From positions 89,940,236 to 90,004,235 of the forward strand of contig NC_052161.1 in NCBI RefSeq assembly GCF_902713615.1: DNA of 64,000 bases, given 5' to 3'. This document shows, piece by piece, positions 43,101-46,100 of this stretch. The notes under the pieces are model-generated. The model searched no databases. It saw only the letters and a program-made list of their open reading frames with translations, and was not told where the DNA came from. Origin of the DNA: Scyliorhinus canicula (lineage: Eukaryota). Every line of letters starts with the position of its first letter. Position 1 is the stretch's first letter. Position numbers and translations under genes: made by a program.

Positions 43101-46100
43101 CTCTGTATCTAACCCCGTGCTGTACCTGTCCTGGGAGTGTTTGATGGGGACAGTGTAGATGGAGATTTACTCTGTATCTAACCGTGCTGTACCTGTCCTG
43201 GGAGTGTTTGATGGGGACAGTGTAGAGGGAGCTTTGCTCTGTATCTAACTGTGCTGTACCTGTCCTGGGAGTGTTTGATGTGGACAGTGTAGAGGGAGCT
43301 TTCCTCTGTATCTAACCCCGTGCTGTACCTGTCCTGGGAGTGTTTGATGGGGACAGTGCAGAGGGAGCTTTACTCTGTTTCTAACCCCGTGCTGTACCTG
43401 TCCTGGAAGTGCTTGATAGGGACAGTGCAGAGGGAGCTTTACTCTGTTTCTAACCCCGTGCTGTACCTGTCCTGGGAGTGTTTGATGGGGACAGTGTAGG
43501 GGGAGCTTTACTCTGTATCTAACCCCGTGCTGTTCCTGCCCTGGGAGTGTTTGATGGGGACAGTGTAGAGGGAGATTTACTCTGTATCTAACCCCGTGCT
43601 GTAACTGTCCTGGGAGTGTTTGATGGGGACAGCGTAGAGGGAGCTTTACTCTGTATCTAGCCCCATGCTGTACGTGCCCTGGGAGTGTTTGATGGGGACA
43701 GTCCAGAGGGAGCTTTACTCTGTATCTAACCCTGTCTTTCTTCCCATTCCTCCCCAGTTGCCTTATGGTGAAGAAGAAATTCCTTTACCATTTCAAGAAC
43801 GCGAGATGGGCCAAGGGCCGACACGAGACCTATATATGTTACATCGTAAAACGGCGGGACAGTGACACCTCCAGCTCCCTGGATTTTGGATTCCTGAGGA
43901 ATAAGCCTGGAGTGCATGCCGAGATGGTCTTCCTTCACCTCCTAACGGGCTGGGACCTGAACCCCGAACGCACCTACCGGCTGACCTGGTTCAGTTCCTG
44001 GAGCCCCTGCTATGAGTGCGCGCTGAGGGTGGTCGAGTTCCTCCGCGCTCGGCCCAATCTGCGCCTCCGCCTCTTTGTGGCCCGCCTGTACTACTGCGGC
44101 GATAAAACCCTTCAGCCCGAGGGCCTCCGCCGTCTCCAACAAGCCGGGGTCAACCTGTGGATCATGACCTATAAAGGTCAGAGTGCCACTGGGGGTCAAG
44201 GGGGAAGGGGAATCATCAATGGTGAAACATTGATTTCAATAAAAAAAGTCTGAGAAATTGAAAAATGTCCAAACAAGACCCTGAATCAATTGTCGTAAAT
44301 CTAATGCCCTTAAGGGGAATTAAACCTGCCGCCCTGACCCGGTCTGTCCTCCATCTGATTTCAGCAGCGTTGTTTGATCTTAAATGCCCCTCGATCAGCC
44401 ACAATCTTATTAAATGGCCGAGCAGGCTGGAAGGGGCTAATTGGTCTTCTTCCCTTCCTGTGGTCTTGACATGAGTTTAAATGTGACTAAAGAATTCAGT
44501 TGGCTTCATCGAGATATCCTCCATTCGGTTGAGGGAAGCAATGGGGGGAGGGGGTGAATGGGGGATTGATTTTCATAGGTGTCACAAGCACAGCAGGAGA
44601 CCATTCGGCCCATTAGGTGTCCAATCCAGTCAAATAAAGACCTGACTGCACTAATCCCATTATCCAGCATTGGCCATAAGCCCAGGAAGTTATTGCATCG
44701 CCTGTGATTATCAAAATACTTCTTAAATGTTACGAAAGCTTCTGACTCACCCTTTCAGACAACGTGTTCCAGATTTCTGACGCCCTCTGGGTGAAGAAGC
44801 GTTCCCTCAAGTCCCCTCTGAATCTCCTGTCCCTTACCTTAAATCTAGGCTCCCTTCTCCAATTATTGACCCCTCTACGAAGGGGAAAAGTACCTCCCTG
44901 TCCATCCTATGTTCCTCATAATGTTGTACACCTCAATCAGGTCCCCTCTCAGCCTTCTCTGCTCCACGGAAAACAACCCCTGTCTAACCAGCCTCTCTTC
45001 ATAGCTGCAAAGCTCCAGCCCTGGCAACATCCTGGTGAATCTCCTCTGCACCCGCTTTAGTGCAATCACATTCTTTCTATAGTGTGGTGACCAGAACTGT
45101 GGACTTTACTCCAACTGTGGACTAACTAGCATTTTATACAGCTCCAGCATAACCTCCCTGCTCTTATATTCTGTGCCTTAAAAACTAGTGTCCCATGTGT
45201 CTTCTTAACCACCTTATCTGCCTGTTCTGCTGTCTTCATGGATCTTTGGACATGCAACCTAAGGTCCTCTGTACGTCTCTATTTTAGTAACTAGAGAAAG
45301 TCAATGGTAATAGAACAAGGATCGATTGAACTGTGTATAATATTCTGCCATAGGAGTAACTCTCTTCTTATCTACCTGTCCTGCTGCCTTCAGGAATTTC
45401 CCAAGGTCCTTCTGATTCTCTGTACTTCCCAGTGTCCCACTGTTAATTGTGTATTCCTTTGTCTTGTTAGTCCTCCCAAAATTCATCACCTCTCACATTT
45501 CCGTGGGAATTCCATTCGCCATTGTTCTGCCCATCAGACCCGTCTGTCGATATCTTGCAGCAGTGTGCAGCTATTCACCTCACTACGTCAGTTTGAGATA
45601 CTTACTAGCCAAGGCATAGAATATATGACTCACTGCCTGAAAGGGTGGTTGAGGCAAGAACTCTCACAGCTATTAAGAATTTTTGATGAGCACTTGAATT
45701 TCCATAGCAGACAAGGTGACAGTCCAAGAGCTGGAAAATTGAATTAGAAGAGTTAGGGCCTCAATAGCCAGCACTCACCTGATGGGCCAAAGGGACTCTT
45801 TCCTGTGCTGTAAAACCCATTTTTGTGTCAATCAAATCAGTGAGGGGATTGGGAACACTAGCTACTGGGCACCTTAAAACCTAACCCAGGCAGCCTGCAG
45901 TTAATGGGGACCGGGTAAGGGGGAAGAGCAGAGAACCCCACCCCCGCCCGGCTCCCTTTCATAGAACGATACAGCGCAGTACAGGCCCTTCGGCCCTCGA
46001 TGTTGCACCGACATGGAAAAAATCTAAAGGCCATCTAACCTACACTATGCCCTTATCATCCATATGCTTATCCAATAACTTTTTAAATGCCCTCAATGTT

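What the first reader, a model, noticed from the sequence alone, without database searches (positions are those of the whole stretch)
43758..44176. AICDA lacks the intron between canonical exons 2 and 3
Mammalian AICDA coding exons are 8/148/271/116/54 nt. Here they are 8/419/116/54, and 419 = 148+271 exactly. The frame reads straight through AAT AAG|CCT GGA (43905/43906), where the phase-0 intron normally lies. The other three introns keep their position and phase, so this is not a retrocopy. It is either a precise intron loss in this lineage or an intron gain in bony vertebrates. I do not know whether this has been reported.
Basis: partly seen in the sequence, partly recalled or inferred. 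Interest (0 to 1): 0.72.

Follow-up and report, generated by a model that had tools for sequence, protein, structure and literature searches.

The report
Catshark AID gene lacks one intron
The catshark gene for AID, the enzyme that mutates antibody genes, really does lack one intron found in human and bony-fish versions; sharks, a skate and frogs all lack it, while ray-finned fishes and amniotes carry an intron at two different spots, so the gene's 'conserved five-exon' layout is not universal, although the protein itself is ordinary.

Summary
Observation confirmed. The window holds the single AICDA gene of Scyliorhinus canicula. Its coding exons are 8/419/116/54 nt, and the spliced product is identical to RefSeq XP_038678208.1. 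The 419-nt exon (43758-44176) reads straight through 43905|43906.

Independent DNA contigs and two spliced mRNA-like contigs support it. It is neither an assembly error nor a retrocopy, because introns 1, 3 and 4 are kept.

The feature is not special to this species. The same undivided exon occurs in a second catshark, Chiloscyllium punctatum and the skate Leucoraja erinacea, and a whale-shark gene model suggests it too. Unexpectedly, the frogs Xenopus tropicalis and Eleutherodactylus coqui also have it.

The "canonical" intron is not one intron. Amniotes have it after ...LRNK (human K52|N53). Sturgeon, gar, bowfin and about 25 teleost-type genomic fragments have it 18 nt downstream, after the catalytic Glu (HVE|LLF).

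The simplest reading (about 0.55) is that the undivided exon is ancestral for jawed vertebrates and bony vertebrates gained introns twice. A precise loss in the elasmobranch stem (about 0.4) is not excluded.

Holocephalans, bichir, coelacanth, lungfish, salamanders, caecilians and the outgroup genes could not be tested. I found no paper describing this; one states that the 5-exon structure is conserved. Interest is moderate.

The parts
40165..40172 (+). AICDA coding exon 1 (ATGGACAG; only the 8 coding nt are placed, the 5'UTR start is not mapped), followed by donor gtaagg; phase-2 intron
   Evidence: sequence. The spliced CDS equals P0070.
40173..43757 (+). Intron 1 (3585 nt, phase 2). It contains a 33-nt tandem array (40703-42363) and a 69-nt minisatellite (42850-43732) that ends 25 nt before the acceptor.
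43758..44176 (+). Undivided 419-nt exon, equal to canonical exons 2+3. It encodes residues 3-142, including the catalytic H-A-E and the SPCxxC zinc ligands.
43905..43906 (+). Site A: the place of the amniote intron (human K52|N53). Here it reads AAG|CCT with no interruption.
   Evidence: Amniote genomic ORFs end at LRNK|GT.
43923..43924 (+). Site B: the place of the ray-finned-fish intron, directly after the catalytic Glu. Here it reads GAG|ATG with no interruption.
44177..46851 (+). Intron 3 (2675 nt, phase 1, gtcaga...ttaaag). It contains a 69-nt minisatellite (46154-46831) that ends 20 nt before the acceptor.
46852..46967 (+). Coding exon 4 (116 nt)
46968..51734 (+). Intron 4 (4767 nt, phase 0, gtgagt...ccacag), rich in 35-nt tandem arrays
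51735..51788 (+). Coding part of the last exon (54 nt including the TGA stop). The 3'UTR continues downstream; its end is not mapped.

Best explanation
This is the functional, expressed, single-copy AICDA (AID) gene of the small-spotted catshark. It has four coding exons. The 419-nt exon encodes the whole catalytic core in one piece: beta1 to beta5, the H-x-E motif and the PCxxC motif.

Shown here:
- The undivided exon is real in DNA and RNA.
- It is shared by sharks of three orders (one of them, the whale shark, only through a gene model) and by a skate.
- It is also found in two frogs.
- The intron that splits this region in bony vertebrates sits at two non-equivalent places: after LRNK in amniotes, and 18 nt further on, after the catalytic Glu, in ray-finned fishes.

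Inferred: the undivided exon is the ancestral state of jawed-vertebrate AICDA. The bony-vertebrate introns are then two independent, later insertions, one in the ray-finned stem and one somewhere on the lineage leading to amniotes. The catshark has lost nothing; it has kept the old layout.

The difference probably has no effect on the protein. It does remove the possibility of exon-3-skipping isoforms.
For: Gene model and identity to RefSeq.

RNA and independent DNA contigs. In the second species, 12 of the 13 listed exon differences fall on third codon positions. The 13th gives the N-to-S change seen in the S. torazame protein.

Undivided exon in genomic DNA of other species:
- C. punctatum, L002 73-552
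- L. erinacea, L003 2001-2411
- the whale-shark gene model P0003, which reads through the exon and on into the next intron
- X. tropicalis, L008 6408-6827, and E. coqui, L007 14766-15185, each with introns 1, 3 and 4 retained

Intron at HVE|LLF, phase 0:
- Amia, Lepisosteus and Acipenser
- about 25 teleost-type exon-2 genomic ORFs and about 10 exon-3 ORFs

Intron at LRNK|(S/N)GCHVE in amniote genomic ORFs, and in named mammal, duck and rattlesnake fragments.

Parsimony: with each site treated as its own character, a late gain needs no losses, while an early gain needs 2-3 losses per site.

Sliding by 18 nt is implausible. The six codons between the sites encode the conserved (S/N)GCH(V/A)E, so they are homologous in all groups.

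The family's jawless relatives include single-exon genes: PmCDA1 and the CDA1L1 genes (PMC5889659). AID's introns were therefore acquired within vertebrates in any case.
Against: Intron gain is regarded as very rare in vertebrates and loss as common (general knowledge, not tested here).

Two independent gains only 18 nt apart in a 597-nt CDS is a coincidence of roughly 6% if sites were random.

No outgroup position could be examined. Holocephali, lamprey CDA2 (four exons, PMC5889659) and APOBEC2 were all out of reach.

From memory, APOBEC3 shares the amniote site, and bird APOBEC1 has five exons (bioRxiv 10.64898/2025.12.03.692250). APOBEC1 is reported from lungfish and amphibians (PMC5889660). 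If it carries site A there, the frog state is a secondary loss. That would show that precise loss of this intron does happen.

Bichir, coelacanth, lungfish, salamanders and caecilians were not sampled.
Confidence: 0.55

Rival explanations
1. Secondary, precise intron loss. The jawed-vertebrate ancestor had an intron in this region, at site A or site B. The stem of elasmobranchs, or of all cartilaginous fishes, lost it exactly, for example by recombination with a reverse-transcribed spliced mRNA. Frogs lost it in parallel, and one bony-vertebrate branch lost it and re-gained an intron nearby.
For: The junction is exact and in frame, with no insertion or deletion relative to bony-vertebrate proteins, as expected for cDNA-mediated loss. 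Two frogs show the same exact absence within tetrapods. If APOBEC1's ancestry places site A before the lungfish split (and memory), the frog case is a loss and shows the event is feasible. From general knowledge, loss is far commoner than gain in vertebrates, and the nearness of sites A and B hints at a historical link.
Against: It needs at least 3 losses plus one extra gain or relocation, against 2 gains. No sampled elasmobranch retains the intron. The nearest groups that do have an intron do not agree on where it lies. Only an internal intron is missing and both 3' introns are kept, which is not the usual 3'-biased pattern of cDNA-mediated loss.
Confidence: 0.33
2. Two old introns and an 18-nt micro-exon. 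The ancestor carried introns at both sites, flanking a micro-exon encoding (S/N)GCHVE. Sharks lost both at once. Ray-finned fishes lost A. Lobe-finned fishes and tetrapods lost B, and frogs later lost A.
For: It explains why the two sites are only 18 nt apart. From general knowledge, adjacent introns are often lost together.
Against: No sampled species has both introns. It needs four losses. An 18-nt constitutive micro-exon carrying the catalytic His and Glu would be unusual.
Confidence: 0.07
3. Artefact or non-orthologous copy. On this reading the exon is an assembly error, cDNA contamination, or a partly processed paralogue, while a canonical 5-exon AICDA lies elsewhere in the genome.
For: None found. 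A genome-wide search for a second copy was not possible with these tools.
Against: DNA contigs from an independent sample and from a second species span the exon and its intron flanks. Spliced RNA contigs use exactly these boundaries. The same structure occurs in three other genomes of cartilaginous fishes. There is no second copy in the window. The 90%-identity protein cluster holds only one S. canicula AID. The scan's notes on this genome list no other AICDA.
Confidence: 0.02

Closest known systems
Human/mouse (amniote) AICDA, coding exons 8/148/271/116/54 nt
   Same: It is the same protein: 198 aa, about 65-70% identity, with the H-x-E and PCxxC motifs and a C-terminal ...DAF..LGL tail. Introns 1, 3 and 4 have the same positions and phases. 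The total coding length is identical.
   Different: Amniotes have a phase-0 intron after LRNK (K52|N53). The catshark reads straight through at 43905|43906.
Ray-finned-fish aicda (bowfin, gar, sturgeon, teleosts), described in the literature as a 5-exon gene
   Same: It is the orthologous gene, and introns 1, 3 and 4 are at the same places.
   Different: Their extra intron lies after the catalytic Glu (HVE|LLF). That is 18 nt downstream of the amniote site, so it separates H-x-E from PCxxC. The catshark has no intron there either, at 43923|43924.
Frog aicda (Xenopus tropicalis XP_031761622.1 locus; Eleutherodactylus coqui KAG9469743.1 locus)
   Same: The architecture matches the catshark exactly: four coding exons, an undivided 420-nt catalytic exon, and introns 1, 3 and 4 retained with phases 2, 1 and 0.
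   Different: These are tetrapods, so the shared state is either retained ancestry or a parallel loss. The X. tropicalis model uses a longer alternative first coding exon.
Processed retrocopies / retrogenes
   Same: An intron is missing exactly at an exon-exon junction.
   Different: Three of the four ancestral-type introns are present with canonical splice sites, the gene is spliced and expressed, and the locus is orthologous across elasmobranchs.
Lamprey CDA1 (single exon) and CDA2 (four exons), PMC5889659
   Same: They are AID/APOBEC-family deaminases of the adaptive immune system with fewer coding exons than mammalian AID.
   Different: They are distant paralogues or orthologues. Their intron positions relative to AID could not be compared here.

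Membership tests
AICDA (AID) orthologue | AID/APOBEC deaminase domain with the H-[AV]-E and PC-x-x-C zinc motifs | tested here: met
   Pfam APOBEC_N, APOBEC2, NAD1 and related models score E about 1e-60 over residues 6-181. HAE and SPCYEC are visible in the translation.
AICDA (AID) orthologue | Closest relatives are AID proteins of other vertebrates, not APOBEC1/2/3/4 | tested here: met
   All top hits are named single-stranded DNA cytosine deaminase / AID. Identity is 99% to S. torazame and 60-75% to ray, tetrapod and bony-fish AID. APOBEC3-type proteins appear only at 35-45% identity.
AICDA (AID) orthologue | Conserved intron positions 1 (phase 2, after 8 nt), 3 (phase 1, after ..M-T-Y/F-K) and 4 (phase 0, after ..R-I-L-Q/L) | tested here: met
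   compared directly with frog, gar, bowfin and sturgeon loci.
AICDA (AID) orthologue | Conserved synteny (MFAP5, RIMKLB and other neighbours) | not tested
   No neighbouring cellular gene was identified in the 64-kb window. The flanks are repeats and retroelement ORFs.
AICDA (AID) orthologue | Expressed, correctly spliced mRNA | tested here: met
   Contigs of 1316 nt and 1164 nt from two runs match the exon exactly and break off at its splice sites. The tissue is unknown, and the runs are only presumed to be RNA.
Canonical five-coding-exon AICDA architecture | Phase-0 intron between codons 52 and 53 (amniote site), or after the catalytic Glu (ray-finned-fish site) | tested here: not met
   The sequence is continuous across 43905|43906 and 43923|43924 in the assembly, in independent DNA contigs and in RNA contigs.
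Processed retrocopy | Loss of all introns, a poly(A) tract, and a location away from the parent locus | tested here: not met
   Three introns are retained with AG/GT sites. The same layout occurs in other elasmobranch genomes.
Precise (cDNA-mediated) intron loss | Exact in-frame junction with no insertion or deletion | tested here: met
   There is no gap at the junction in alignments with bony-vertebrate AID. An ancestrally undivided exon would look exactly the same.
Precise (cDNA-mediated) intron loss | Outgroups carry an intron at the same position | tested here: inconclusive
   The bony-vertebrate groups disagree: site A in amniotes, site B in ray-finned fishes, none in frogs. Chimaeras, lamprey CDA2 and APOBEC2 could not be examined.

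The most novel reading that the evidence does not exclude
The undivided catalytic exon of sharks, skates and frogs is the original layout of jawed-vertebrate AICDA. The "intron 2" of ray-finned fishes and that of amniotes are then two independent insertions, 18 nt apart, on either side of the six codons that carry the catalytic His and Glu. That would be a rare, datable case of parallel intron gain within vertebrates. It would also supply two clade-marking rare genomic changes.
Probability: 0.5. Interest if true: 0.6.

Novelty: new variant of a known kind. Interest (0 to 1): 0.45.

Why it matters
AICDA is one of the most studied genes of adaptive immunity, and its five-exon structure is repeated in the literature as conserved across vertebrates (for example PMC9795746). 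That comparison covered only teleosts, Xenopus, chicken, mouse and human.

The data here show three distinct layouts. The intron numbered "2" in fish and the one numbered "2" in mammals are not the same intron. This matters in four ways:

- Exon-numbered comparisons of splice variants and regulatory introns between species may not line up.
- Gene-model projection in shark and amphibian genomes should not assume five coding exons.
- The two sites are potential clade markers.
- If the polarity inferred here holds, this is a clean example of intron gain in vertebrates, which is thought to be very rare.

It does not change what the protein does.

Tried and rejected
Loci I could not fetch: Heterodontus, C. 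plagiosum and Mobula returned "file too large", and Latimeria was not on record.

Callorhinchus AID did not appear in any of the three protein searches, so Holocephali remain untested.

I looked for genomic ORF fragments of outgroup paralogues (APOBEC2, lamprey CDAs) with the exhaustive representative search. The candidates that seemed to read through were annotated mammalian APOBEC3 isoforms and an Ensembl apobec2a model, not raw genomic ORFs. They say nothing about intron positions.

The two Pleurodeles isoforms differ only by skipping exon 1, which is not informative.

Conticello 2005 and 2008 are not held in the library. Other literature searches found no description of shark or frog AICDA exon structure.

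Between the two catsharks, all 13 listed exon differences fall in the exon-3-like part. That suggested extra constraint on the exon-2-like part. Third-position divergence is equal in both parts in the deeper comparisons with bamboo shark and skate, so I dropped the idea.

I rejected intron "sliding" by 18 nt as a mechanism, because the six intervening codons are homologous and conserved in all groups.

Read laying was limited to 43700-46150 to avoid the long minisatellites, so the exon-to-exon joints themselves were not displayed. Only the exact break-off points of the RNA contigs were seen.

Full report
**What is in the window.** An acceptor AG sits at 43756-43757. An open exon runs from 43758 to 44176 (419 nt), and a donor GT follows at 44177. 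The reading frame passes AAT AAG (43900-43905) and CCT GGA (43906-43911) without interruption.

I located the other coding exons by motif search and by reading the sequence:
- exon 1, ATGGACAG|gtaagg, at 40165-40172
- a 116-nt exon at 46852-46967
- the last 54 coding nt at 51735-51788

Joined, they give a 597-nt CDS. Its 198-aa product is identical to P0070, Scyliorhinus canicula XP_038678208.1, "single-stranded DNA cytosine deaminase". Pfam places the whole protein in the AID/APOBEC domain at E about 1e-60. The window is the AICDA locus of the small-spotted catshark, and it holds no second AID-like sequence.

**Is the undivided exon real?** I laid contigs from four public runs on 43700-46150.
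- Two runs gave mRNA-like contigs of 1316 nt and 1164 nt. An internal stretch of 422 nt in each matches 43755-44176 with no differences. Each then continues with sequence that is not the adjacent intron. The transcript therefore uses exactly this donor and this acceptor, and has no joint inside the exon. The three extra letters at the 5' side, CAG, fit both the end of exon 1 and the end of intron 1.
- A DNA run of a second species gave a 510-nt contig covering 43706-44204 in one piece. Of its 13 listed exon differences, 12 fall on third codon positions. The other, 44153 A>G, produces the Asn-to-Ser change that distinguishes the S. torazame protein P0001. This is orthologous coding DNA under purifying selection.
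- An independent DNA sample of the same species bridges 43905|43906 (contig 43866-44084) and the exon-intron boundary (contig 44134-44451).

Assembly error, cDNA contamination and retrocopy are excluded.

**How widespread is it in cartilaginous fishes?**
- The Chiloscyllium punctatum genomic contig L002 (BEZZ01074501.1) reads the homologous region in one frame, positions 73-552. A 1030-nt intron and exon 4 follow.
- The little-skate locus L003 encodes residues 1-137 contiguously, positions 2001-2411. Introns 3 and 4 follow at the usual places.
- A whale-shark gene model, P0003, reads through the whole region and then on into the following intron.

The feature is therefore at least as old as the split between sharks and rays. 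I could not obtain any chimaera sequence. Callorhinchus AID never appeared in three protein searches.

**Where is the intron in bony vertebrates?** This is where the picture changed.

Genomic ORF fragments from amniotes end exon 2 at ...DFG(H/Y)LRNK followed by a GT-encoded Val. Exon 3 in amniotes starts ...Q|(S/N)GCHVELLFLRY. Named examples include a duck, a lemur, a kangaroo rat and a rattlesnake fragment that begins at SGCHVE. That is the known human K52|N53 site.

In bowfin (L004), spotted gar (L005) and Chinese sturgeon (L006), exon 2 instead runs on to ...(S)GCHVE|gt, and exon 3 starts at (L/V)LFLRY, in phase 0. About 25 teleost-type exon-2 fragments and about 10 exon-3 fragments show the same boundaries. 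The ray-finned-fish intron therefore lies 18 nt downstream of the amniote one, directly after the catalytic glutamate. In the catshark the two places are 43905|43906 and 43923|43924, and both are uninterrupted.

**Frogs.** The Eleutherodactylus coqui locus L007 encodes residues 11-150 in one block, positions 14766-15185. The Xenopus tropicalis locus L008 encodes residues 14-153 in one block, positions 6408-6827. Both keep introns 1, 3 and 4 in phases 2, 1 and 0. Two distantly related frogs thus have exactly the shark layout.

**Interpretation.** There are three layouts:
- no intron (elasmobranchs, frogs)
- site B (ray-finned fishes)
- site A (amniotes)

The six codons between the sites encode the conserved (S/N)GCH(V/A)E in every group. 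The intron cannot have "slid", because that would replace catalytic residues with former intron sequence. Each site therefore needs its own insertion event.

If each insertion happened late, no losses are needed. Site B would have arisen on the ray-finned stem, and site A on the lineage to amniotes. If either insertion is pushed back to the jawed-vertebrate ancestor, two or three exact losses must be added for it. On parsimony, the catshark exon is the retained ancestral state.

Lamprey relatives of AID include single-exon genes (PMC5889659). Introns of this family were acquired within vertebrates in any case.

Four considerations weigh against this reading:
- Intron gain is generally held to be far rarer than loss in vertebrates.
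- The two sites are suspiciously close, about a 6% coincidence if sites were random.
- Bird APOBEC1 has five exons with a 116-nt penultimate exon, and APOBEC1 is reported from lungfish and amphibians. If it carries site A there, frogs lost the intron secondarily and exact loss at this spot is demonstrably possible.
- I had no outgroup. Chimaeras, lamprey CDA2 and APOBEC2 were out of reach.

I therefore put ancestral absence at about 0.55. I put a precise loss in the elasmobranch or chondrichthyan stem at about 0.33. A two-intron ancestor with an 18-nt micro-exon gets about 0.07, and artefact about 0.02.

**Comparison with what is known.** The gene is an ordinary AID orthologue and is annotated as such in RefSeq. 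The exon structure is implicit in those gene models. I found no paper that describes it:
- "AICDA" with "intron loss" returned nothing.
- Searches combining AID, shark or cartilaginous, exon and intron found no relevant text.
- Ghorbani et al. 2022 (PMC9795746) state that the 5-exon structure "is conserved across examined vertebrates". Their figure compares cod, zebrafish, catfish, two Xenopus species, chicken, mouse and human. The X. tropicalis locus examined here has only four coding exons.

Key older papers (Conticello 2005, 2008) were not available to me. Prior mention cannot be ruled out.

**Verdict.** The finding is a real variant of gene architecture, apparently undescribed, and of moderate interest. 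Its main value is that AICDA "intron 2" is not one homologous intron, and that sharks and frogs share a four-coding-exon layout that may be the original one.

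Noticed in passing
window 42850-43732, 46154-46831 and 39682-39994: Arrays of the same 69-nt minisatellite. Two of them end 20-25 nt upstream of the acceptors of the 419-nt exon and of exon 4, so the last repeat supplies the polypyrimidine and branch-point region of both introns. A basking-shark protein model (P0074) even translates the repeat (..LTLYLT..) in front of exon 2. This is the subject of the scan's note s1-262504.
   Followed up: partly
window 40703-42363 (33-nt unit, about 50 copies); 47022-48661 and 49013-50350 (35-nt unit): Large tandem arrays fill much of introns 1 and 4 of AICDA and create long spurious ORFs on both strands.
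   Followed up: no
window 30518-32495 (+): ORFs with reverse transcriptase, RNase H and integrase domains. This looks like a Ty3/gypsy-like retroelement pol remnant about 8 kb upstream of AICDA exon 1.
   Followed up: partly
window 57266-59311 (+): An intact 682-aa ORF with two CCHC zinc knuckles (Gag-like).
   Followed up: no
window 43758-44176, against the contig of the second catshark species: All 13 listed exon differences between the two catsharks lie in the last 257 nt (the GC-rich, exon-3-like part) and none in the first 162 nt. Deeper comparisons show no such skew, so it is probably regional mutation bias or chance.
   Followed up: yes
L006 (Acipenser sinensis) 2500-3086; P0004/P0079 (Hypanus sabinus); L008 (X. 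tropicalis) 1001-1039: Oddities in public gene models. The sturgeon protein P0039 uses a shifted donor that gives ..TFKGKRN.. instead of ..TFKDYFY... Stingray isoforms X1 and X2 read through the exon-4 donor into the intron. The Xenopus model uses an alternative 39-nt first coding exon.
   Followed up: no
L007 (E. coqui) 15187-15351: Intron 3 of frog aicda is only 165 nt, against 2675 nt in the catshark. Intron 1 in the same frog is 13.2 kb.
   Followed up: no
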